Shown piece by piece: positions 21,914 through 35,278 of a stretch of DNA of 64,000 bases. The stretch is from positions 122,671-186,670 of the forward strand of contig NW_005434637.1 of assembly GCF_000315625.1 (NCBI RefSeq). Reading direction: 5' to 3'. The stretch comes from Guillardia theta CCMP2712. Lineage: Eukaryota; Protista; Cryptophyta. Position numbers and translations under genes: made by a program. The notes beneath the pieces were generated by a model. The model saw nothing but the letters and a program-made list of their open reading frames with translations. It did no database searches and was not told the DNA's origin. Every line of letters starts with the position of its first letter. Positions within the stretch are counted from its first letter, which is position 1.

Positions 21914-22181
21914 TTTCGAGGAATCGAGCTTGCGTTCTTACCAAGTCGAGTCATTCCCTTCCCTTGCGTTGTTACCATGGGATAAAAGAAAACAATATGA
22001 AGAAGTCAAGGACAACTGACGACAGAACTGTTGTATGCTAGAGTGCAAATCAGTGCAAATCAGTGCAAATCAGTGCAAATCAGTGCATCTGCGTTGGTCA
22101 ACTCCTCCATTCATTTCATGTCCTTGTACGACCATGTCTCTATGGCTCCCAATCTAATTGTTACCCTATTTTCTCGTGAAA

Positions 22182-22262
<81 letters not shown>

Positions 22263-23114
22263 CGCACCTTCTCCTGCTGCTGCTGCTGCTGCAGCAGCAG
22301 CTGCTGCAGCAGCTGCTGCAGCACCTCCTCCTCCTCCTCCTCCTCCTCTCCCCTCTTGAACCTCCAGGCATGGTGCATGAAGCTTCTTGCCATAGCATGG
22401 CACCACCCACTCTCGCAAAGTCGCAAAACGGTCAAAACTATTATCCCTTGCGCACAAGTTGGACCGGACATCCTCCCACCCCCCTGAAGAGCACTTCTTA
22501 CCCACCCCCTTCGCCTGATTGGAATACCCTTTCTCCCCTGTACCCCTGTTTTGGCTGTCATGAAAGGGATACCAGGACCCCCACCCACCCTGGTGTCACT
22601 AAAACTTCGGCAACTGCCCGACTCTCACTGCCGCATTCCTGCCGTAACCACCCCTACCCGTAACCTCCGAATCATGGGAAAACTACCGGTACGAGACCCT
22701 GATGATTTCTGGGACCCAAAACTTGCACGTCCGCCTCAGTAACGGCGAAGCCATACTGAATTTTAACTTAACTTTCAGTGAGGACTCTCGGCTCGGCGGG
22801 TTCTCACAAACCTGTCGGCCCGCCCGGCCCGGGCCCGGCACGAGTGGCACACCGTGACCCGGACATCAGCAAGCACTGAAGGGCGCACAGCGGCAGACAC
22901 ACGGACTCCGGGACTCGAGGCCAACGGCTGGTTGGGTGACTCGACCATATCATAGCACGGTACAAGAGTTCGGACACCCCGTGTCGGACCCGGCATCTCA
23001 AACTCAGTAAGGAGGGACAAATCAGAGTCTCAAATCGAATGATCGCTGTAGATTTCAAACCAACAACAGAGCATGGCATTTGAAAAAACACAACATTGAA
23101 GCCAAACGTACACC

Positions 23115-26100
23115 TTACTGACATAGCACGTTGCGGAAGTTCACGTACTCCTTGTGCACATGCTGCTTCACGGTGTACATCTCCTCTAGCAGCACCTGCC
23201 ACCCCTTGTCACCCCCTCTCCTCCTCTCACCCCCTCCCGCCATCGACCTGGACCTCGCAGATGTGTCGTCGCAGGTTGAGTGTCTCGTCCCATTGCTTAA
23301 GCGGGATGAAAGTGCATGAGCCGTTCTTAGCGTTGACCGTCCATCCTACCTGCCCTCCTCCAGTCACTCCCTCTCCCCTCCTCCTCCGGTTCCCTCTTCT
23401 CTCCCCTCCTCTTCCGCTTCCCGCCAAGTCCCTCCTTTCCTTTCTCCTCTCGTCTCCTCCCTTCCCGCCCCCCCGTTTCTCCTCTCTCTCCCTCTTGCTT
23501 GTCGCACCTCAACACATATGCACAGGTCCCGATACCCTCCGCAAGCTCGAAGATCGTACCTCCTGTCATACCTGCCCTTCAAAGTCATCTCTTCCTTCTC
23601 CTCCTCTCTCTCCCCTCCCCTCCCTTTCCCCTTCCTCTGACCTGTTCTTGATGCTCGTGATGTTCAAGTACACCCCGTCACCGCGTCCCCCTTTTCCTGA
23701 CTGTACCACACATCCATCACACCCCGCGCAAGCCCCCCCTCTCCTCTATCACCTCCACGCCCTGCCGCCTCATCCTTCTCCTCGCTCATCGGCCCGCTTA
23801 GCCCTGCCGCCACCGCCGACATCGACCGCACCTTACTCACCCACTCCAGCACCTCCTCCACCGACTTCACCACCACTGTACACCGCACCAGGTCCGTCAA
23901 GCACGACGGGTCCCGGTGGTACGACCTCACGGTCTTCTGGATGGCTCGCTCGCAGGACTTCACCTTCCCGTGCTCCGTCCTACCCACGGGGTTCCACCCG
24001 CTTACCCAAAGCTGGAACGCCGCGCTCACCTCGTGTGCTTCCTCGAACAGCTTCTCCAGGCTCTTGCTCTCCTGCCGGATCTTCTTGCTCCTCACCGAGT
24101 ACCGCGACGCCCGCTTGCCCATCGCCCTTGACCGCACCCTCTCCCACAAGCCCCCCTCCCGTCTACTCCATGCCCCGAGCTTCTGCGAGATCTCCAGCAC
24201 TTCCCTGCTGATCTCCTCCAGCTTGTCCGTTGACGAGGACACGACCTTGCTCCAGGTCTTCTCGAAGCCTTCCATCGCCGCACTGAGATCCTTATACGTC
24301 TGCCGGTACGACAGCGAGTACTTCACGACGATGACGATGACGATGATCCAGCAGATGATTCCCACCACCAAGAATATCGGCCTGATGTTCTCCCGTATCG
24401 TGAGGCCGTCTCTGATGCAGTAAGCTCCTTGCAGCACAAACACTACGATCCAGGCATAATGCTGCATGAAGTGCACAAAGTACAGCACGATCGAGACGCA
24501 TGCTATCAGTATGAACGACGACAGCCCGATACCAGTCGGCCATGAAACAGCATGCTTTGCATCGAACTGGATGAAGTCCGAAGTCAACGAGATGATCTTC
24601 AGCCATACAATCAGATGTCCGGATCCTACCAAGACACGCTTGGCGTTCAAGGGCGTGCTATACCTACACGTCACGATCGCAGACAGATACAGCGTACCCC
24701 ATAGGAAGGCAAGGAAGGAGTCGATCACTTTCGACACTTGCACCGTCCTCGGTGTGAGGGACTCGTTTGTTGCAGGATCTGTGATCCAGATAGAGGTCCC
24801 TTCTAACATCCGCTGTACCATCACTGCCCCGAACAAGAGCTGGATCACTCCTTCAAACGCGATGCAGCACTGCGCGGGCGTCTTCAGCAGCGCTGTCTCC
24901 AGCGCGTTGCTCGACCTCAGCGCTAGTATCCCGTCCACGTCGTCGTCCCGGTACACTCGCAGCCTCGTGTTCAACGGCAGGAAACGCTCGTCCTCCGCAC
25001 AGCCCCTCACCATCTCCCCTATCGCCTTCACCGCCTCGTCGTAGAAAGCCTCCTTCGCTCTGTTGATCCCCTCGCACGTCCCCTCGCAGTCCTCGCACGC
25101 CCTCGCCCTGCTCGTCGACGTCATCGTGCTCACAGCTGACAGCCGGTCAAGCGAGTCGATACTCCGCAGCGCAAAGAACTCGTGCAGCAGCTCGTACGTC
25201 TTCGTCTCTCGCAGCACCTGCAGCATCTCTATCCCCCGTGGGTTGTGCTTCTCGAAGTGCCATACCTGCCCTGCTATCTGGGCCCTCAGCTCCTTCACAA
25301 GATGCTCCTTCAGCATCCCCCCCGCTTCCTCCGCGCTCCTCCTCACGTCCTGCTCCTTGCCCACCAGGTACACCCCGCATGCTCCGCTCACTGCCTCCGG
25401 ACAAGCCTCAAGCCCTAGGCTCCCCCGGCTCGTGCATGACAGCAGCCTCACCACCGCGTCTCGCACAGACACGCTCCTCAGATACCCCAGCAGCTTCTCC
25501 CGCTCCTCCTTCACTCCCGCCCCCTGCAGAAGTCCGCACGCCCTCTCGCTGTTCACCCCCGACCCCCTCCCGCTCAGCCTCTCCACTGCCTCCCTCAGCG
25601 ACACGTGCCCTCCTCCCTCGTCTCGCAGGATCGGTAGCACAAGCCTCGCCCTCCCGGCCTTCTTCTCCAGCAGGTAGATCATCGCCAGCGCAAGCTGCAA
25701 GAAGTCGTCCTCCCTGTCCGCCTCCTCCCGGATCCCTTCCAGCAGCCCCAGCACGCTCGTCACTCTCCCCCACGTGATCACCGGCACGAACATGGTGCAG
25801 TTGCACACGAACCTCTCCTTGCTGAAAGCCTGCCGGTTCACAGACAGGTACGAGATGCAGTCCACGTCCAGGTATGTCTTCTGAGCGTAGATCTTGAAGA
25901 GCCACGCCTCCTCCTCCTCCAGCTCCTCGTGCACCACCCGATGCAGCTCGTCCCGCGAACGCCTGCTCGTCGAAGCCCCCCCGCTCGCCCCCGGGCCCTC
26001 CCGGCAGGGGTCGGAGGCGATCGGCTTTCTTGGTGGGGTGCCAGCGGAGGATGAAGAAGTGCACGTTATCGTCGTGGGTCTGGAGGGAGTGCTGGGATCT

Positions 26101-26160
26101 GCGCTGGAGGACGGTGAGGCGGGAGGGCTGCTTGAACCGAGCGAGAAGCTTGGAGCTCAT
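23115..26160 (-). CDS. TIR-like/SAM-like/6TM/RelA-SpoT-like protein, copy 1 (1-bp insertion at ~25953: pseudogene or sequencing error)
   Basis: Five exons; KVKSCERAIQK, LTDLVRCTVV, IKNR, GGYRDL, HICEVQV, HKEY motifs; frameshift relative to copies 2 and 3. Confidence 0.8.
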
Positions 26161-27590
26161 TGCGGCTCAGAGATTATAAGGTTAGTTGCGTTGTTTGAAG
26201 ACAGATATTTTCTGTCACTCGCGCCCAATCGGGATCATCTTTGGGTTAAACACCGAGCCTCAAGGTCTTCGGGTATGTGTAAAGAGCCGAAGGTCATTGC
26301 GAGGAGCTGAAGCGAAGGGAGATCCTTATCAGTATAAGAGGAGCAGGGTAGGAGAGCATGCGAAGGGGAGAAGGCAAGGAAGATGCGGAAGATGGGAGGG
26401 GACGAAGACAAGGGGATGTTGGAGGAAGCCGAGGCGGACAAGGAAGGGTAGAGGAGAGCAGNNNNNNNNNNNNNNNNNNNNNNNNNNNNNNNNNNNNNNN
26501 NNNNNNNNNNNNNNNNNNNNNNNNNNNNNNNNNNNNNNNNNNNNNNNNNNNNNNNNNNNNNGGTGGGGAGGAGGGAGGGTGAAGGGATGTTAGAGCAAGG
26601 AGGTGAAGTAGAGAGGGGGAGGAGTGAGGAATGGAGGAGACGTTCTGGGGGATAAAGAGATGGTAGGGTGGGTGGTGTGGCTCATGTAGGTGCTTCAAAG
26701 GGGGTCCTCAGTGTGAATCAGGGAGGGGTCTACTTGATTGGATGGGGTCGGGTGCGGGCTTATGATTTGATATATATATATATATATATATATATTAAAC
26801 ACAAACAACTTACTTATAAAACATACGGAAAATGCGTTGCTTACTATAACTTGTTTTAGTATTATTTTTGAATGCCAACATTTGAGGAGATCTCCTTTTA
26901 TTTTCAAAAGTTATAAATAAGTTTCAACTATTGTCCACCCGGTTGCTACAGATCTTTACAACTGATCGCATCCAATCCTCAAAAAAACAGACTGAAGGGG
27001 GTGGGGTCCTCTTTCCTCGCCCCTCTGGGGTGGGTCAGAAAGTTAAGTAGCTAGAGGGGGGTGGGTAGGATGGTCCGCTGCAAGTCAATTACCGGAACCC
27101 TGCCATGGCATGATGTGAAAGGACTCTCATGCTCGTCCGGCGCCGCTCTTCTAGTGACGGCTCAGTCCCTGAGGACCAGCAGCAAGCACTTGACCAACCG
27201 AGCCTCCGCCAGAGATCGATGCTCGAGTCTTGTACTTGTGCCGCGGGAGGAAGGATAGCGGTAGGGGTCTGGAGGCCTCTTCAGCCATGCTGGCCCGCGG
27301 ACTGGCACCACGATGAGCCCTGCATGACCTGAGACATCACGACCAAACCATATGTAAGGAGATCACAGGAATGATGTTCAGCCTGCAACTCTTTCTATGA
27401 TCCCTTGAAGCCACCGATAGAATGTAGAACGGCAGGAAGGAACAACTCAGCTGAACCCTAACGATACAGACAAGCATAACGCGTTGCTCTACGCGGCACA
27501 ACGAGCCATTTCCCCTCACCCAGTCACACTGTACGTATCTCAAGAGCCTTAAGGCAACATAACTTTATTCCCCAGACTCAAACTGACATC

Positions 27591-30500
27591 TTACTGACAT
27601 AGCACGTTGCGGAAGTTCACGTACTCCTTGTGCACATGCTGCTTCACGGTGTACATATCCTCTAGCAGCACCTGCCACCCCTTGTCACCCCCTCTCCTCC
27701 TCTCACCCCCTCCCGCCATCGACCTGGACCTCGCAGATGTGTCGTCGCAGGTTGAGTGTCTCGTCCCATTGCTTAAGCGGGATGAAAGTGCATGAGCCGT
27801 TCTTAGCGTTGACCGTCCATCCTACCTGCCCTCCTCCAGTCACTCCCTCTCCCCTCCTCCTCCGGTTCCCTCTTCTCTCCCCTCCTCTTCCGCTTCCCGC
27901 CAAGTCCCTCCTTTNNNNNNNNNNNNNNNNNNNNNNNNNNNNNNNNNNNNNNNNNNNNNNNNNNNNNNNNNNNNNNNNNNNNNNNNNNNNNNNNNNNNNN
28001 NNNNNNNNNNNNNNGTCCCCTCCCTTCCCGCCCCCCCGTTTCTCCTCTCTCTCCCTCTTGCTTGTCGCACCTCAACACATATGCACAGGTCCCGATACCC
28101 TCCGCAAGCTCGAAGATCGTACCTCCTGTCATACCTGCCCTTCAAAGTCATCTCCTCCTCCTCTCTCTCCCCTCCCCTCCCATTCCTCTGACCTGTTCTT
28201 GATGCTCGTGATGTTCAAGTACACCCCGTCACCGCCCTCCCCCCTTCCTGACTGTACCACACATCCATCACATCCCGCGTAAGCCCCCCCTCTCCTCTAT
28301 CACCTCCACGTCTCCTGCCGCCTCATCCTTCTCCTCGCTCATCGGCCCGCTTAGCCCTGCCGCCACCGCCGACATCGACCGCACTTGCCTCACCCACTCC
28401 AGCACCTCCTCCACCGACTTCACCACCACTGTACACCGCACCAGGTCCGTCAAGCACGACGGGTCCCGGTGGTACGACCTCACGGTCTTCTGGATGGCTC
28501 GCTCGCAGGACTTCACCTTCCCGTGCTCCATCCTCCCCACGGGGTTCCACCCGCTCACCCAAAGCTGGAACGCCGCGCTCACCTCGTGCGCTTCCTCGAA
28601 CAGCTTCTCCAGGCTCTTGCTCTCCTGCCGGATCTTCTTGCTCCTCACCGAGTACCGCGACGCCCGCTTGCCCATCGCCCTTGACCGCACCCTCTCCCAC
28701 AAGCCCCCCTCCCGTCTACTCCATGCCCCGAGCTTCTGCGAGATCTCCAGCACTTCCCTGCTGATCTCCTCCAGCTTGTCCGTTGACGAGGACACGACCT
28801 TGCTCCAGGTCTTCTCGAAGCCCTCCATCGCCGCACTGAGATCCTTATACGTCTGCCGGTACGACAGCGAGTACTTCACGACGATGACGATGACGATGAT
28901 CCACGAAATAACGCCAAGAACGACAAACATCGGCTTGGTGTTCTCCCGTATTGTGAGCCCGTCTCTGATGCAGTAAGCTCCTTGCAGCACAAACACTACG
29001 ATCCAGGCATAATGCTGCATGAAGTGCACAAAGTACAGCACGATCGAGACGCATGCTATCAGTATGAACGACGACAGCCCGCTACAACCCGGCCATGAAA
29101 CAGCATCCTTTACATCGCACTGAATGAAGTCCGAAGCCGATGAGATGATCTTCAGCCATACAATCAGATGTCCGGATCCTACCAAGACACGCTTGGCGTT
29201 CAAGGGCGTGCTAAACCTACACGTCACGATCGCAGACAGATACAGCGTACCCCATAGGAAACTCAGAAATGAGTCGATCACTTTCGACACTTGCACCGTC
29301 CTCGGTGTGAGGACCTCTTTTGTTTCGGGAAATTGCATCCAGATTGTGTGCCCTTCTAACATCCGCTGTACCATCACTGCCCCGAACAACAGCTGCGTAA
29401 TTCCAGCAAACGCGATGCAGCACTGCGCGGGCGTCTTCAGCAGCGCTGTCTCCAGCGCGTTGCTCGACCTCAGCGCTAGTATCCCGTCCACGTCGTCGTC
29501 CCGGTACACTCGCAGCCTCGTGTTCAACGGCAGGAAACGCTCGTCCTCCGCACAGCCCCTCACCATCTCCCCTATCGCCTTCACCGCCTCGTCGTAGAAA
29601 GCCTCCTTCGCTCTGTTGATCCCCTCGCACGTCCCCTCGCAGTCCTCGCACGCCCTCGCCCTGCTCGCCGACGTCATCGTGCTCACAGCTGACAGCCGGT
29701 CAAGCGAGTCGATACTCCGCAGCGCAAAGAACTCGTGCAGCAGCTCGTACGTCTTCGTCTCTCGCAGCACCTGCAGCATCTCTATCCCCCGTGGGTTGTG
29801 CTTCTCGAAGTGCCATACCTGCCCTGCTATCTGGGCCCTCAGCTCCTTCACAAGATGCTCCTTCAGCATCCCCCCCGCTTCCTCCGCGCTCCTCCTCACG
29901 TCCTGCTNNNNNNNNNNNNNNNNNNNNNNNNNNNNNNNNNNNNNNNNNNNNNNNNNNNNNNNNNNNNNNNNNNNNNNNNNNNNNNNNNNNNNNNNNNNNN
30001 NNNNNNNNNNNNCTCGCACAGACACGCTCCTCAGATACCCCAGCAGCTTCTCCCGCTCCTCCTTCACTCCCGCCCCCTGCAGAAGTCCGCACGCCCTCTC
30101 GCTGTTCACCCCCGACCCCCTCCCGCTCAGCCTCTCCACTGCCTCCCTCAGCGACACGTGCCCTCCTCCCTCGTCTCGCAGGATCGGTAGCACAAGCCTC
30201 GCCCTCCCGGCCTTCTTCTCCAGCAGGTAGATCATCGCCAGCGCAAGCTGCAAGAAGTCGTCCTCCCTGTCCGCCTCCTCCCGGATCCCTTCCAGCAGCC
30301 CCAGCACGCTCGTCACTCTCCCCCACGTGATCACCGGTACGAACATGGTGCAGTTGCACACGAACCTCTCCTTGCTGAAAGCCTGCCGGTTCACAGACAG
30401 GTACGAGATGCAGTCCACGTCCAGGTATGTCTTCTGAGCGTAGATCTTGAAGAGCCACGCCTCCTCCTCCTCCAGCTCCTCGTGCACCACCCGATGCAGC

Positions 30501-30712
30501 TCGTCCGCGAACGCCTGCTCGTCGAAGCCCCCCCGCTCGCCCCCGGGCCCTCCCGGCAGGGGTCGGAGGCGATCGGCTTTCTTGGTGGGGTGCCAGCGGA
30601 GGATGAAGAAGTGCACGTTATCGTCGTGGGTCTGGAGGGAGTGCTGGGATCTGCGCTGGAGGACGGTGAGGCGGGAGGGCTGCTTGAAGAGAGCGAGAAG
30701 CTTGGAGCTCAT
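27591..30712 (-). CDS. TIR-like/SAM-like/6TM/RelA-SpoT-like protein, copy 2 (~900 aa)
   Basis: Exons 30712-28304, 28251-28193, 28134-28071, 27825-27724 and 27671-27591 splice in frame at GT-AG sites; one N gap in exon 1. Confidence 0.85.
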
Positions 30713-32102
30713 TGCGGGCTCAGAGATTATAAGGTTAGTTGCGTTGTTTGAAGAGAGATATTTTCTGTCACTCGCGCCCAATCGGGATCATCTTTGGGTT
30801 AAACACCGAGCCTCAAGGTCTTCGGGTATGTGTAAAGAGCCGAAGGTCATTGCGAGGAGCTGAAGCGAAGGGAGATCNNNNNNNNNNNNNNNNNNNNNNN
30901 NNNNNNNNNNNNNNNNNNNNNNNNNNNNNNNNNNNNNNNNNNNNNNNNNNNNNNNNNNNNNNNNNNNNNNNNNNNNNGGCAAGGAAGATGCGGAAGATGG
31001 GAGGGGACGAAGACAAGGGGATGTTGGAGGAAGCCGAGGCGGACAAGGAAGGGTAGAGGAGAGCAGGGCAAGGAGGGAGGGAGAGAGAGAACGCGGCGTG
31101 AAGGATGTGGAGGATGTAGATAATGGAAAGATTGGGGAGGGTGGGGAGGAGGGAGGGTGAAGGGATGTTAGAGCAAGGAGGTGAAGTAGAGAGGGGGAGG
31201 AGTGAGGAATGGAGGAGGAGACGTTCTGGGGGATAAAGAGATGGTAGGGTGGGTGGTGTGGCTCTTGTAGGTGCTTCAAAGGGGGTCCTCAGTGTGAATC
31301 AGGGAGGGGTTTCACTTCATTGGGTGGGGTGGGGCCTGATTGGATGGGGTGGGGTGCGGGGGCTGACCTATTAACTCGATATATATATTTTAAAAACAAA
31401 CAACTTACTTTTAAAATAGGCTCACTAAAACTGGTTTTAGTAACATCGTCAACCAAGCTTGTTGTTACACATCATTACAACGGACAGGGCAGAAGGGGGT
31501 GGGGTCCTCTTTCCTCGCCCCTCTGGGGTGGGTCAGAAAGTTAAAAGTAGCTGGTCGAGAAGTTGGAGGGGGGTGGGTAGGATGGTCCCCTACAAGTCAA
31601 TAGCCGGAACCCTGCCATGGCATGATGTGAAAGGACTCTCATGCACGTCCGGCGCCGCTCTTCTAGTGACGGCTCAGTCCCTGAGGACCAGCAGCAAGCA
31701 CGTGACCAACCGAGCCTCCGCCAGAGATCGATGCTCGAGTCTTGTGCTTGTGCCGCGGGAGGAAGGATAGCGGTAGGGGTCTGGAGGCCTCTTCTGCCAT
31801 GCTGGCCCGCGGACTGGCATCTTGACGAGCCCTGCATGACCTGAGACATCACGACCAAACCATATGTAAGGAGATCACAGGAATGATGTTCAGCCTGCAA
31901 CTCTTTCTATGATCCCTTGAAGCCACCGATAGAATGTAGAACGGCAGGAAGGAACAACTCAGCTGAACCCTAACGATACAGACAAGCATAACGCGTTGCT
32001 CTACACTAAACATTGAGCCATTCACCCTGACCCAGCAACACTGTAAGTATCTCAAGAGCCTTAAAGCAACATAACTTTATTCCCCAGACTCAAGCTGACA
32101 TC

Positions 32103-35100
32103 TTACTGACATAGCACATTGCGGAAGTTCACGTACTCCTTGTGCACATGCTGCTTCACGGTGTACATCTCCTCTAGCAGCACCTGCCACCCCTTGTCAC
32201 CCCCTCTCCTCCTCTCACCCCCTCCCGCCATCGACCTGGACCTCGCAGATGTGTCGTCGCAGGTTGAGTGTCTCGTCCCATTGCTTAAGCGGGATGAAAG
32301 TGCATGAGCCGTTCTTAGCGTTGACCGTCCATCCTACCTGCCCTCCTCCAGTCACTCCCTCTCCCCTCCTCCTCCGGTTCCCTCTTCTCTCCCCTCCTCT
32401 TCCGCTTCCCGCCAAGTCCCTCCTTTCCTTTCTCCTCTCGTCCCCTCCCTTCCCGCCCCCCCGTTTCTCCTCTCTCTCCCTCTTGCTTGTCGCACCTCAA
32501 CACATATGCACAGGTCCCGATACCCTCCGCAAGCTCGAAGATCGTACCTCCTGTCATACCTGCCCTTCAAAGTCATCTCCTCCTCCTCTCTCTCCCCTCC
32601 CCTCCCATTCCTCTGACCTGTTCTTGATGCTCGTGATGTTCAAGTACAGCCCGTCACCGCCCTCCCTCCTTTGTGACTGTNNNNNNNNNNNNNNNNNNNN
32701 NNNNNNNNNNNNNNNNNNNNNNNNNNNNNNNNNNNNNNNNNNNNNNNNNNNNNNNNNNNNNNNNNNNNNNNNNNNNNNNNNNNNNNNNNNNNNNNNNNNC
32801 CTCGCTCATCGGCCCGCTTAGCCCTGCCGCCACCGCCGACATCGACCGCACTTTNNNNNNNNNNNNNNNNNNNNNNNNNNNNNNNNNNNNNNNNNNNNNN
32901 NNNNNNNNNNNNNNNNNNNNNNNNNNNNNNNNNNNNNNNNNNNNNNNNNNNNNNNNNNNNNNNNNNNNNNNNNNNNNNNNNNCCTTCCCGTGCTCCGTCC
33001 TACCCACGGGGTTCCACCCGCTTACCCAAAGCTGGAACGCCGCGCTCACCTCGTGTGCTTCCTCGAACAGCTTCTCCAGGCTCTTGCTCTCCTGCCGGAT
33101 CTTCTTGCTCCTCACCGAGTACCGCGACGCCCGCTTGCCCATCGCCCTTNNNNNNNNNNNNNNNNNNNNNNNNNNNNNNNNNNNNNNNNNNNNNNNNNNN
33201 NNNNNNNNNNNNNNNNNNNNNNNNNNNNNNNNNNNNNNNNNNNNNNNNNNNNNNNNNNNNNNNNNNNNNNNNNNNNNNNNNNNNNNNNNNNNNNNNNNNN
33301 NNNNNNNNNNNNNNNNNNNNNNNNNNNNNNNNNNNNNNNNNNNNNNNNNNNNNNNNNNNNNNNNNNNNNNNNNNNNNNNNNNNNNNNNNNNNNNNNNNNN
33401 NNNNNNNNNNNNNNNNNNNNNNNNNNNNNNNNNNNNNNNNNNNNNNNNNNNNNNNNNNNNNNNNNNNNNNNNNNNNNNNNNNNNNNNNNNNNNNNNNNNN
33501 NNNNNNNNNNNNNNNNCGCATGCTATCAGTATGAACGACGACAGTCCGCTACATTCCGACGTAAAACCAGCTTCCGATGGATCGCACTGGATGAAGTCCG
33601 AAACCGACGAGATGATCTTCAGCCATACAATCAGATGTCCGGATCCTACCAAGACACGCTTGGCGTTCAAGGGCGTGCTNNNNNNNNNNNNNNNNNNNNN
33701 NNNNNNNNNNNNNNNNNNNNNNNNNNNNNNNNNNNNNNNNNNNNNNNNNNNNNNNNNNNNNNNNNNNNNNNNNNNNNNNCACCGTCCTGGGAATGATGAC
33801 CTCCTTTGTAATAGAATCTTCCATCCAGATTGAGTGCCCTTCTAACATCCGCTGCACCATCACTGCCCCGAACAAGAGCTGGANNNNNNNNNNNNNNNNN
33901 NNNNNNNNNNNNNNNNNNNNNNNNNNNNNNNNNNNNNNNNNNNNNNNNNNNNNNNNNNNNNNNNNNNNNNNNNNNNNNNNNNNCAGCACTGCGCGGGCGT
34001 CTTCAGCAGCGCTGTCTCCAGCGCGTTGCTCGACCTCAGCGCTAGTATCCCGTCCACGTCGTCGTCCCGGTACACTCGCAGCCTCGTGTTCAACGGCAGG
34101 AAACGCTCGTCCTCCGCACAGCCCCTCACCATCTCCCCTATCGCCTTCACCGCCTCGTCGTAGAAAGCCTCCTTCGCTCTGTTGATCCCCTCGCACGTCC
34201 CCTCGCAGTCCTCGCACGCCCTCGCCCTGCTCGCCGACGTCATCGTGCTCACAGCTGACAGCCGGNNNNNNNNNNNNNNNNNNNNNNNNNNNNNNNNNNN
34301 NNNNNNNNNNNNNNNNNNNNNNNNNNNNNNNNNNNNNNNNNNNNNNNNNNNNNNNNNNNNNNNNNNNNNNNNNNNNNNNCATACCTGCCCTGCTATCTGG
34401 GCCCTCAGCTCCTTCACAAGATGCTCCTTCAGCATCCCCCCCGCTTCCTCCGCGCTCCTCCTCACGTCCTGCTCCTTGCCCAACAGGTACACCCCGCATG
34501 CTCCGCTCACTGCCTCCGGACAAGCCTCAAGCCCTAGGCTCCCCCGGCTCGTGCATGACAGCAGCCTCACCACCGCGTCTCGCACAGACACGCTCCTCAG
34601 ATACCCCAGCAGCTTCTCCCGCTCCTCCTTCACTCCCGCCCCCTGCAGAAGTCCGCACGCCCTCTCGCTGTTCACCCCCGACCCCCTCCCGCTCAGCCTC
34701 TCCACTGCCTCCCTCAGCGACACGTGCCCTCCTCCCTCGTCTCGCAGGATCGGTAGCACAAGCCTCGCCCTCCCGGCCTTCTTCTCCAGCAGGTAGATCA
34801 TCGCCAGCGCAAGCTGCAAGAAGTCGTCCTCCCTGTCCGCCTCCTCCCGGATCCCTTCCAGCAGCCCCAGCACGCTCGTCACTCTCCCCCACGTGATCAC
34901 CGGTACGAACATGGTGCAGTTGCACACGAACCTCTCCTTGCTGAAAGCCTGCCGGTTCACAGACAGGTACGAGATGCAGTCCACGTCCAGGTATGTCTTC
35001 TGAGCGTAGATCTTGAAGAGCCACGCCTCCTCCTCCTCCAGCTCCTCGTGCATCACCCGATGCAGCTCGTCCGCGAACGCCTCCTCGTCGAAGCCCCCCC

Positions 35101-35278
35101 GCTCGCCCCCGGGCCCTCCCGGCAGGGGTCGGAGGCGATCGGCTTTCCTGGTGGGCTGCCAGCGGAGGATGAAGAAGTGCACGTTATCGTCGTGGGTCTG
35201 GAGGGAGTGCTGGGATCTGCGCTGGAGGACGGTGAGGCGGGAGGGCTGTTTGAAGAGAGCGAGAAGCTTGGAGCTCAT
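32103..35278 (-). CDS. TIR-like/SAM-like/6TM/RelA-SpoT-like protein, copy 3 (many N gaps)
   Basis: Same start (MSSKLL) and same terminal exons as copy 2; distinct loop sequences. Confidence 0.8.

What the first reader, a model, noticed from the sequence alone, without database searches (positions are those of the whole stretch)
24350..33840. Paralog divergence is concentrated in the three alternate (exoplasmic) loops of the 6TM domain
Seen: the soluble domains differ by only a few residues, but TM1-2 loops read GTSIWITDPATNESLT / GHTIWMQFPETKEVLT / GHSIWMEDSITKEVII. TM3-4 loops read FDAKHAVSWPTGIG / CDVKDAVSWPGCSG / CDPSEAGFTSECSG. TM5-6 reads ENIRPIFLVVGIIC / ENTKPMFVVLGVIS (gap in copy 3). 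The intervening loops (STPLNAKR, HFMQHY) are essentially unchanged where sequenced. With six helices and both termini cytosolic, the variable loops all lie on the opposite face. Inference: diversifying selection on a ligand-binding surface, with homogenisation elsewhere, as in polymorphic immune receptors. Copies 2 and 3 carry a Cys pair in loop 2 (possible disulfide).
Basis: partly seen in the sequence, partly recalled or inferred. Interest (0 to 1): 0.88.

Follow-up and report, generated by a model that had tools for sequence, protein, structure and literature searches.

The report
Old variable patches in homogenised receptor paralogs
Three neighbouring copies of an undescribed membrane receptor-enzyme gene in the alga Guillardia theta are kept almost identical by copy-correction, except for three short, much older patches on the outer face of the membrane domain; whether selection for diversity or mere weak constraint preserves those patches is not settled.

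Summary
The window is Guillardia theta CCMP2712 nuclear DNA with three tandem genes on the minus strand, period about 4.55 kb. Each encodes a TIR-fold domain, a SAM-like domain, six TM helices and a RelA/SpoT-type (Tas1/SAS-like) synthetase domain.

- **Divergence pattern:** The copies differ by 0.1-2% over coding, intron and most spacer DNA. They differ by 17-32% in three short blocks, copy-2 codons 436-470, 524-545 and 585-603. The TM domain holds 56 of 70, 39 of 50 and 35 of 45 nucleotide differences (P 1e-18 to 1e-23).
- **Location:** Amino-acid variation sits mainly in the loops opposite both termini: 24 of 54 loop positions, 11 of 116 helix positions, 1 of 13 cytosolic-loop positions.
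- **Correction:** The third "loop" is mostly the outer half of TM6. It changes conservatively.

Homogenisation elsewhere is strongly supported. Synonymous divergence in the blocks is also 10-40 times higher (dS 0.15-0.4, up to 1.3, against 0.01). Some blocks are closer to a sister-lineage contig than to their array neighbours, so they are old lineages that escaped gene conversion. dN/dS in the outer loops is 0.7-1.5 and not significantly above 1.

Two other paralog pairs in the genome show the same TM-centred mosaic. All three loop 3-4 variants occur in independent DNA and RNA-derived assemblies.

The parts
23115..26160 (-). Copy 1 gene (GUITHDRAFT_109014). One long exon plus four short 3' exons that carry the SAS catalytic motifs. 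It has one extra G and a 2-nt deletion relative to copies 2 and 3.
   Evidence: Raw RNA reads and spliced contigs confirm introns at about 23194-23245 and 23348-23505.
27591..30712 (-). Copy 2 gene (GUITHDRAFT_109015). It contains N runs at 27915-28014 (a placeholder; 13 nt by homology) and 29908-30012 (exact length, in frame).
32103..35278 (-). Copy 3 gene, not represented among the protein hits. It is broken by seven N runs. Two of the three variable blocks are readable.
24750..24854 (-). Variable block V1 of copy 1 (codons 436-470: middle of TM1 to loop 1-2). Homologous blocks lie at 29303-29407 (copy 2) and 33789-33883 (copy 3; its start is lost in a gap).
   Evidence: 17-20% DNA divergence among the copies. 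Copy 3 is 9.7% from the sister-lineage contig.
24525..24590 (-). Variable block V2 of copy 1 (codons 524-545: outer end of TM3 and loop 3-4). Homologous blocks lie at 29078-29143 and 33545-33610. Copy 1 lacks the conserved Cys pair.
   Evidence: 17-32% DNA divergence; dN/dS 0.93-3.6, not significant. Three variants are seen in independent runs.
24351..24407 (-). Variable block V3 of copy 1 (codons 585-603: loop 5-6 and outer half of TM6). The homologous block of copy 2 lies at 28904-28960. In copy 3 it is unread (N run 33150-33516).
   Evidence: 29.8% DNA divergence between copies 1 and 2, dS 1.28, dN/dS 0.17. Copy 1 is 5.3% from the sister-lineage contig.
24408..24524 (-). Homogenised stretch between V2 and V3 (TM4, loop 4-5, TM5). 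There are no differences among the copies, synonymous sites included.
   Evidence: 0 of 27 synonymous sites differ.
25952..25954 (-). Extra G in copy 1 (GCGGGAC against GCGGAC), which shifts the frame after residue 70. It could be real or a base-calling error.
   Evidence: Contigs of three other runs lack it, but they carry copy-3 letters, so it remains unresolved.
26161..27590 (.). Spacer between copies 1 and 2. It is 99-100% identical to the copy 2-3 spacer near the genes. Its centre is 92-95% identical and includes about 170 unalignable bases.

Best explanation
The three genes are old tandem paralogs of a cryptophyte receptor-enzyme. Its inferred layout is a cytosolic TIR-fold domain, a SAM-like domain, six TM helices, a coiled linker and a cytosolic RelA/SpoT-type (Tas1/small-alarmone-synthetase-like) nucleotide pyrophosphokinase domain.

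Interlocus gene conversion, or unequal exchange, keeps nearly the whole 4.5-kb unit identical, including introns and promoter-proximal spacer. Three short segments have stayed unconverted since before the split from the nearest sister lineage: loop 1-2, loop 3-4, and loop 5-6 with the outer half of TM6. They lie on the face of the TM domain opposite the termini. Each copy therefore keeps a private outer surface on a shared signalling body.

- Shown: the mosaic, the greater age of the islands, their position in the six-helix layout, the folds of the terminal domains, and the presence and transcription of all three variants.
- Inferred: the outer face is the sensing or specificity surface. Convertants that erase the differences are removed by selection. 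This is functional differentiation of the paralogs rather than ongoing positive selection detectable as dN/dS > 1.
- Also inferred: sensing is relayed to TIR/SAM-mediated assembly and to the synthetase domain.
For: - Identity: G. theta proteins GUITHDRAFT_109014 and 109015 match at 99% and 85% over the compared ORF.
- Mosaic: there are 0-1 mismatches per 100 nt over most of the unit, against 7-17 per 100 nt in the TM region.
- Rates: dS in the blocks is 0.23-0.39, against 0.012-0.019 outside the TM domain.
- Age: flanks are 0.1-0.4% apart within the array but 4.2-4.5% from the sister-lineage contig. In contrast, V1 of copy 3 is 9.7% from that contig against 17-19% from its neighbours. V3 of copy 1 is 5.3% from the contig against 29.8% from copy 2. 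V3 of copy 2 shares the residues MFVVLG with the distant paralog on C42 and evolves at dN/dS 0.17, so it is an old constrained lineage and not mutational noise.
- No donor: no other locus in the assembly is closer than 72% to the blocks.
- Replication: the inverted pair on contig C117 has 0 differences in 1350 nt but 59-62% in two patches on the same outer face. The pair on contig C4 has its differences mainly in TM helices.
- Reality of the copies: three V2 variants occur at about 1:1:1 depth in an independent DNA run, and all three occur in spliced contigs.
- Domains: Tas1 (6ox6) at E 5.9e-7; the top 50 Foldseek hits are all SAS/Rel synthetases; the catalytic-type motifs are invariant; TIR domains score Z 8-10.6.
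- Precedent: mosaic divergence through interlocus gene conversion is documented for tandem HMA4 genes (bioRxiv 10.1101/2025.10.29.685298).
Against: - dN/dS in the outer loops is about 1 (0.70-1.52, none significant). It is 0.50 in a conversion-free orthologous comparison. Selection for difference is therefore not demonstrated.
- The loops are the least constrained part of the protein, which alone could seed islands.
- The spacer also contains a less homogenised centre where no selection for diversity is expected.
- In the C4 pair the islands lie in helices of both leaflets, not in loops.
- The sister-lineage contig has a 40-nt terminal overlap and is probably a collapsed tandem unit, so its blocks may come from different copies.
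- Copy 3 is incomplete.
- Copy 1 may be damaged (an extra G, loss of the Cys pair). This would make part of the non-synonymous excess relaxed constraint.
- Membrane orientation is inferred, not measured. Counts of positive charges in the loops are not decisive.
Confidence: 0.6

Rival explanations
1. The mosaic is the same, but the islands are neutral. The outer loops are weakly constrained, so they diverged fastest after the old duplication. Once locally too divergent, they were excluded from conversion tracts by heteroduplex rejection. No selection for diversity is involved.
For: - dN/dS is about 1 in the loops within the array.
- In the single-copy C31 ortholog pair the loops have the highest dN (0.144, against 0.047 in soluble parts and 0.020 in helices) at similar dS, and dN/dS is 0.50.
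- The spacer has its own less homogenised centre.
- Effective conversion rates that vary within genes give mosaics in the HMA4 model.
Against: - Islands fall in the TM domain in three independent paralog clusters.
- V3 and the C4 islands lie in constrained helices, not in free loops (dN/dS 0.17-0.3).
- The 117-nt and 160-nt stretches between islands were converted cleanly, so tracts do reach into the region.
- Deep comparisons show that the loops are constrained (dN/dS 0.14-0.35 against C31; conserved Cys pair, Trp and Pro).
Confidence: 0.33
2. The array is young (duplication at dS of about 0.01). The blocks were changed afterwards by a local process: targeted hypermutation, or import of foreign cassettes by ectopic conversion.
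For: - dN/dS near 1 together with high dS is what untargeted local mutation would give.
- Block edges are sharp, most extremely in the C117 pair: 0/1350 nt and then about 60%.
Against: - No donor closer than 72% exists in the assembly.
- Blocks are shared with the sister lineage.
- V3 of copy 2 keeps residues found in distant paralogs and has dN/dS 0.17, which is not expected from random mutation.
Confidence: 0.04
3. The pattern is an assembly artefact. Reads of a collapsed or allelic repeat were sorted wrongly, so flanks look identical and blocks look copy-specific.
For: - Copy 3 is riddled with N runs that abut the blocks.
- Consensus calling in near-identical repeats can erase low-level differences.
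Against: - Three V2 variants occur at about 103:97:81 depth in an independent 2021 DNA run. Two exact variants occur in a 2011 run, and all three in a spliced assembly.
- An assembler cannot turn 20% divergence into 0%.
- The same mosaic appears in gap-free pairs on other contigs.
Confidence: 0.03

Closest known systems
Mosaic divergence of tandem paralogs under interlocus gene conversion (for example the three HMA4 copies of Arabidopsis halleri; MHC and plant R-gene clusters, the latter from general knowledge)
   Same: Tandem copies are homogenised over most of their length, non-coding DNA included, with short islands of high divergence. Paralogs are closer to each other than to orthologs in the flanks.
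   Different: The islands here sit on one face of a six-helix membrane domain. They recur in other paralog pairs of the same family. Some are older than a lineage split. dN/dS above 1, typical of MHC peptide-binding sites, is not shown.
Tas1 and toxic or small alarmone synthetases (RelA/SpoT homologue synthetase fold; RelQ/RelP, FaRel2)
   Same: The C-terminal domain matches Tas1 by profile (E 5.9e-7) and SAS/Rel structures by fold. The Lys/Arg, Asp, Gly-Tyr/Phe-Arg and Glu-x-Gln motifs are invariant in the family.
   Different: The protein is eukaryotic. The domain is split over five exons and fused to six TM helices, a SAM-like domain and a TIR-fold domain. The window's own proteins do not reach Pfam PF04607. 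Substrate and product are unknown.
SARM1-type and plant TIR immune proteins (TIR plus SAM oligomerisation modules)
   Same: The N-terminal domain has the TIR fold: the top 11 VIA hits are all TIR domains at Z 8.0-10.6, and plant TIRs lead the Foldseek list. A SAM-like segment follows.
   Different: There is no Pfam TIR or SAM hit for the window proteins. The domain order differs. The protein is membrane-embedded with a synthetase effector. The catalytic state of the TIR-like domain was not tested here.

Membership tests
Concerted evolution by interlocus gene conversion with divergence islands | Near-identity of paralogs at synonymous and non-coding sites over long tracts | tested here: met
   dS is 0.007-0.017 in the soluble domains. 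Introns, 3' exons and promoter-proximal spacer show 0-1 mismatch per 100 nt.
Concerted evolution by interlocus gene conversion with divergence islands | Paralogs within the genome are closer to each other than to the homolog of a sister lineage in the converted parts, but not in the islands | tested here: met
   Flanks are 0.1-0.4% apart within the array against 4.2-4.5% to contig L001. V1 of copy 3 is 9.7% from L001 against 17-19% from its neighbours. V3 of copy 1 is 5.3% against 29.8%. Caveat: L001 is probably a collapsed tandem unit.
Concerted evolution by interlocus gene conversion with divergence islands | Formal tract test (GENECONV or GARD) | not tested
   Only a binomial clustering test was run (P 1e-18 to 1e-23).
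Diversifying selection on a receptor surface (polymorphic immune-receptor model) | dN/dS significantly above 1 at the variable sites | tested here: not met
   Outer loops give 1.30, 1.52 and 0.70 (Fisher P 0.40, 0.27, 0.87). Loop 3-4 reaches at most 2.58 (P 0.21). Block V3 gives 0.17. The sample is small, so power is low.
Diversifying selection on a receptor surface (polymorphic immune-receptor model) | Variable sites lie together on one exposed face | tested here: met
   24 of 54 alternate-loop positions vary, against 11 of 116 helix positions and 1 of 13 cytosolic-loop positions. The six helices come from the AF2 models and hydropathy. The side of the membrane is inferred, not measured.
Diversifying selection on a receptor surface (polymorphic immune-receptor model) | The variable surface binds a ligand or partner | not testable with these tools
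   No data.
RelA/SpoT homologue synthetase (small alarmone synthetase, Tas1-like) | Sequence-profile match to a characterised member | tested here: met
   The family profile matches Tas1 (6ox6_A) at E 5.9e-7. One relative hits PF04607 at 1.8e-5. The window proteins alone give no Pfam hit.
RelA/SpoT homologue synthetase (small alarmone synthetase, Tas1-like) | Synthetase fold | tested here: met
   AF2 model with pLDDT 88. The top 50 Foldseek hits are all RelP, RelQ, Rel, Tas1 or FaRel2 (E from 9e-5; TM by target 0.5-0.59).
RelA/SpoT homologue synthetase (small alarmone synthetase, Tas1-like) | Conserved catalytic and nucleotide-binding motifs | tested here: met
   K-x3-R-x3-K-x2-R-x-Y and D-[LI]-V-R are invariant in 40 of 40 sequences. 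The Arg of G-[YF]-R is present in 36 of 36. E-x-Q is present in 33 of 33 (Glu) and 32 of 32 (Gln). The correspondence to the canonical RSH motifs rests on my own knowledge.
RelA/SpoT homologue synthetase (small alarmone synthetase, Tas1-like) | Pyrophosphoryl transfer from ATP to a nucleotide or tRNA | not testable with these tools
   This needs an enzyme assay.
TIR domain | TIR fold | tested here: met
   In VIA-align the top 11 hits are all TIR domains at Z 8.0-10.6 (RPS4/RRS1, RPP1, Cat1, SARM1, IL-18R-beta, MyD88, TIRAP). In Foldseek the top 13 are plant TIRs, but E is only 0.011-0.15.
TIR domain | Sequence-family match and catalytic Glu | not tested
No Pfam TIR hit was found for the window proteins. 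The catalytic position was not examined here.
SAM domain | Profile match | tested here: inconclusive
   The family profile matches Eph-receptor SAM domains at E 0.005-0.9. One relative scores 20.4 bits on SAM_2 against a cut-off of 20.5.

The most novel reading that the evidence does not exclude
The family is a cryptophyte surface-receptor repertoire for innate immunity or self/non-self recognition. Hypervariable exoplasmic segments of the six-helix domain determine specificity and are protected from gene conversion by selection. Engagement drives TIR/SAM-mediated assembly and switches on a Tas1-like synthetase, which makes an alarmone-type nucleotide or depletes ATP. This would be a eukaryotic counterpart of bacterial toxSAS defence wired to a membrane sensor.
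Probability: 0.25. Interest if true: 0.85.

Novelty: new variant of a known kind. Interest (0 to 1): 0.6.

Why it matters
Mosaic divergence under gene conversion is known. Here it marks, without any prior annotation, which part of an undescribed eukaryotic receptor-enzyme is allowed or required to differ between otherwise identical copies. That part is the membrane domain, mainly its outer face, and this holds in three independent paralog clusters.

This gives a concrete, testable pointer to the specificity-determining surface of a TIR-fold/SAM-like/six-TM/RelA-SpoT-type family. The domain combination recalls immune and conflict systems of bacteria, plants and animals. If the islands are selectively maintained, cryptophytes would have a receptor repertoire built on an alarmone-synthetase effector. 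If they are neutral, the locus is a clean natural example of how weak constraint and conversion limits shape paralogs.

Tried and rejected
- Pfam on the window ORFs and on the JGI models gave no significant family. phmmer of a paralog against PDB gave nothing.
- The ESM Atlas feature search with the TM region gave no usable hit, so the six-helix domain remains unassigned. The Foldseek list for that model was filled by the synthetase domain.
- A search of the whole assembly for donor cassettes of the blocks found only the three copies and paralogs at 68-72% identity. Import from an archive of silent copies was therefore rejected.
- The reads could not settle the extra G of copy 1. The only contigs across it carry copy-3 letters.
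- The raw RNA run is a 3'-end library. It confirms two introns but does not reach the blocks.
- Counts of Lys and Arg in the loops do not decide the orientation (my reading of the sequence).
- My first cut for structure prediction missed TM1, so the TM domain is split over two models and no six-helix bundle was modelled as a whole.
- Literature searches found no description of this family or locus.
- PAML, HyPhy and GENECONV are not available here. Nei-Gojobori counts with Fisher tests were used instead.
- One protein look-up (P0013) was not on record.

Full report
**What the locus is.**
- The window is nuclear DNA of the cryptophyte Guillardia theta CCMP2712. The long ORF of copy 1 is 99% identical to GUITHDRAFT_109014, and copy 2 corresponds to GUITHDRAFT_109015.
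- Three copies lie head to tail on the minus strand, with a period of 4553 and 4566 nt.
- Each gene has one long exon and four short 3' exons.
- Raw RNA reads and spliced contigs confirm introns at about 23194-23245 and 23348-23505, with GT..AG ends on the minus strand.
- The same genome holds at least a dozen further paralogs on other contigs. Relatives occur in Hanusia phi and in unnamed transcriptomes and metagenomes.

**Gaps.**
- The program's warning was tested first. Both sides of every N run align collinearly with the gap-free copy 1.
- N runs of 105, 128, 367 and 114 bases have exactly the length of the homologous stretch, so they behave like masked sequence and keep the frame.
- The 100-N runs, and one of 119 N, are placeholders. 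By homology 13 to 81 bases are missing there.
- All codon comparisons were therefore made by projecting each readable piece onto the frame of copy 2, and codons with N were dropped.

**The observation.**
- At the DNA level the copies show 0-1 mismatch per 100 nt over most of the unit. This includes the 3' exons and introns and the promoter-proximal spacer. Across the membrane domain they show 7-17 mismatches per 100 nt.
- The variable codons form three blocks in the numbering of copy 2. V1 is 436-470, V2 is 524-545 and V3 is 585-603. A few extra sites lie at 481-484 and 500. Codons 546-584 are identical, synonymous sites included.
- The TM domain holds 56 of 70, 39 of 50 and 35 of 45 nucleotide differences for the three pairs (P 3e-23, 2e-21, 2e-18). 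Within it the alternate loops are further enriched (P 5e-3 to 1e-10).
- At the amino-acid level, 24 of 54 positions vary in the alternate loops, 11 of 116 in helices, 1 of 13 in the other loops and 11 of 629 in the soluble domains.
- One correction is needed.

**Are the copies real?** Reads and contigs from independent public runs were laid on copy 1.
- A 2021 DNA run shows three loop 3-4 variants at depths of about 103, 97 and 81.
- A 2011 run holds the copy-1 variant exactly, beside a second variant.
- An assembly with spliced contigs, which is therefore RNA-derived, holds all three at 6.2, 4.2 and 3.9.
- The blocks are therefore not assembly artefacts, and all three copies appear to be transcribed.
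- Copy 1 has an extra G in a short G run (25952-25954). It also has a 2-nt deletion just before the first intron, which the JGI model compensates by a shifted acceptor. The contigs that cross the extra G carry copy-3 letters, so its reality is open.

**Topology and domains.**
- Two AlphaFold models built on family alignments were obtained: pLDDT 88 for TM2 to the C-terminus, and 76 for the N-terminus to TM2. Together with hydropathy they give six helices.
- The helices are joined by tight turns on one side (STPLNAKR, MQHY). On the other side the loops are longer: a beta-hairpin in loop 1-2, 8-18 residues in loop 3-4 and 5 residues in loop 5-6.
- With six helices, the variable loops lie opposite both termini.
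- The C-terminal domain is a RelA/SpoT-type synthetase.
  - The family profile matches the (p)ppApp synthetase toxin Tas1 (6ox6) at E 5.9e-7.
  - The 50 best Foldseek matches are all small alarmone synthetases, Rel enzymes, Tas1 or FaRel2.
  - The basic, Asp, Gly-Tyr/Phe-Arg and Glu-x-Gln motifs are invariant in the family.
  - One relative reaches Pfam PF04607.
- The N-terminal domain has the TIR fold. In a Foldseek-independent search the 11 best hits are all TIR domains at Z 8.0-10.6, and plant TIRs head the Foldseek list at weak E-values.
- A SAM-like segment follows the TIR-fold domain (E 0.005 to Eph SAM domains).
- There is no signal peptide. All known TIR, SAM and ATP-using synthetase domains work in the cytosol (general knowledge). 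Loop 3-4 carries a Cys pair conserved through the cryptophyte members. The variable face is therefore most probably exoplasmic, but this is inferred.
- In other proteins the synthetase-like domain is joined to TIR_2, F5/8 type C, kinase plus HEPN, TPR or ankyrin modules. This context recalls conflict and immune systems.

**What the divergence means.** The key result is that synonymous divergence is raised as much as non-synonymous divergence.

| Region and comparison | dS | dN | dN/dS |
|---|---|---|---|
| Soluble domains, within the array | 0.007-0.017 | 0.003-0.004 | 0.21-0.48 |
| Soluble domains, array copies against contig L001 | 0.08-0.10 | 0.024-0.033 | 0.26-0.33 |
| Alternate loops, within the array | 0.15-0.40 | 0.19-0.42 | 1.30, 1.52, 0.70 |
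| Block V3, copy 1 against copy 2 | 1.28 | 0.218 | 0.17 |

- None of the loop ratios is significantly above 1 (P 0.27-0.87).
- L001 is a metagenome contig of a sister lineage. Amino-acid selection cannot raise dS, so the blocks are older than the flanks.
- The sister-lineage contig shows this directly. It is 4.2-4.5% from all three copies in the flanks. Its V1 is 9.7% from copy 3, while copy 3 is 17-19% from its neighbours. Its V3 is 5.3% from copy 1, while copies 1 and 2 differ by 29.8%.
- V3 of copy 2 shares residues with the distant paralogs on contigs C31 and C42. It is therefore an old, constrained lineage and not mutational noise.
- No other locus in the assembly is closer than 72% to the blocks, so recent import from a donor is unlikely.
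- One caveat applies. The sister contig has a 40-nt terminal overlap at a length close to one repeat unit. It is probably a collapsed tandem unit and may mix copies.

**Replication elsewhere in the genome.**
- An inverted pair on contig C117 has 0 differences in 1350 nt. It has 62% and 59% differences in two patches of 16 and 23 codons. The first patch covers the end of loop 3-4 and the outer half of TM4. The second covers the outer end of TM5, loop 5-6 and the start of TM6. The 19 codons between the patches differ by only 4%.
- A pair on contig C4 is near-identical except for small patches, most of them in TM1, TM2, TM5 and TM6.
- In three independent clusters the membrane domain is thus what stays different. 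In two of them the outer face stays different; in the third it is the helices themselves.

**Selection or neutrality?**
dN/dS is about 1 within the array.
- A comparison free of conversion is available: the single-copy paralog on C31 against its ortholog on a metagenome contig. There dS is fairly even (0.15-0.29). The alternate loops have the highest dN (0.144, against 0.047 in soluble parts and 0.020 in helices), with dN/dS of 0.50.
- The loops are therefore the least constrained part of the protein. This alone could seed islands that later resist conversion.
- The spacer also has a less homogenised centre.
- Several points argue against a purely neutral reading:
  - The islands recur in the TM domain in three clusters.
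  - Some islands lie in constrained helices.
  - The short stretches between the islands were converted cleanly.
  - The loops are constrained in deep comparisons (dN/dS 0.14-0.35; conserved Cys, Trp and Pro).
- Copy 1 and copy 3 contribute most of the single-copy loop changes: 7 and 8, against 2 for copy 2.
- Copy 1 alone has lost the ancestral Cys pair and gained an N-x-S sequon in loop 1-2. Together with its possible frameshift, this leaves room for relaxed constraint on that copy.

**Verdict.**
- The mosaic is best explained by concerted evolution through interlocus gene conversion, with old islands on the outer face of the membrane domain. Confidence in this part is about 0.9.
- That selection for distinct outer surfaces preserves the islands is plausible but unproven, and a neutral barrier model is a serious rival.
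- Mosaic divergence under gene conversion is a known phenomenon (HMA4 in Arabidopsis halleri). The family in which it occurs, and the recurrence of TM-centred islands, appear to be undescribed.
- Earlier notes of this scan on the same window already proposed the domain architecture. It was checked independently here.

Noticed in passing
L006 and L011 (G000 contig C117, 82709-84955 minus and 86962-88950 plus): Inverted pair of paralogs of the same family. There are 0 differences in 1350 nt, but about 60% differences in two patches of 16 and 23 codons at the outer ends of TM4-TM6. L011 also seems interrupted after the TM domain.
   Followed up: partly
L013 and L014 (G000 contig C4, 1071666-1073756 minus and 1077142-1079232 plus): Another near-identical inverted pair. 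Its few differences cluster in TM1, TM2, TM5 and TM6 and in one short stretch of the N-terminal region. Loops 1-2 and 3-4 are almost unchanged.
   Followed up: partly
L001 (ENA metagenome contig, 4411 nt): The contig has a 40-nt terminal overlap at about one repeat length. The sister lineage therefore probably also carries this gene as a tandem array, collapsed by the assembler.
   Followed up: partly
window 25952-25954 and about 23760: Copy 1 has an extra G (frameshift after residue 70). It also has a 2-nt deletion just before the first intron, which the JGI model offsets by an acceptor 4 nt downstream. Copy 1 alone lacks the family's Cys pair in loop 3-4 and has an N-E-S sequon in loop 1-2.
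   Followed up: partly
proteins P0026, P0037 and other relatives: The RelA/SpoT-like domain of this family also occurs with TIR_2, F5/8 type C, protein kinase plus HEPN_DZIP3, TPR and ankyrin modules in unnamed eukaryotic and metagenomic proteins.
   Followed up: partly
window 22100-22500: Long CTG/CAG and GA/TC microsatellite tracts lie just beyond the 3' end of the array.
   Followed up: no
window 32681-34379: In copy 3, several N runs have exactly the length of the homologous sequence, and readable islands of only 55-167 nt lie between them. This looks like masking of ambiguous consensus rather than true scaffold gaps.
   Followed up: partly
L015 (ENA metagenome contig, 1482 nt): This is an ortholog of the single-copy paralog on contig C31. 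It carries two in-frame stops and small indels, which are probably assembly errors. Its synonymous distance to C31 (0.18) is about twice that of L001 to the array copies (0.09).
   Followed up: no
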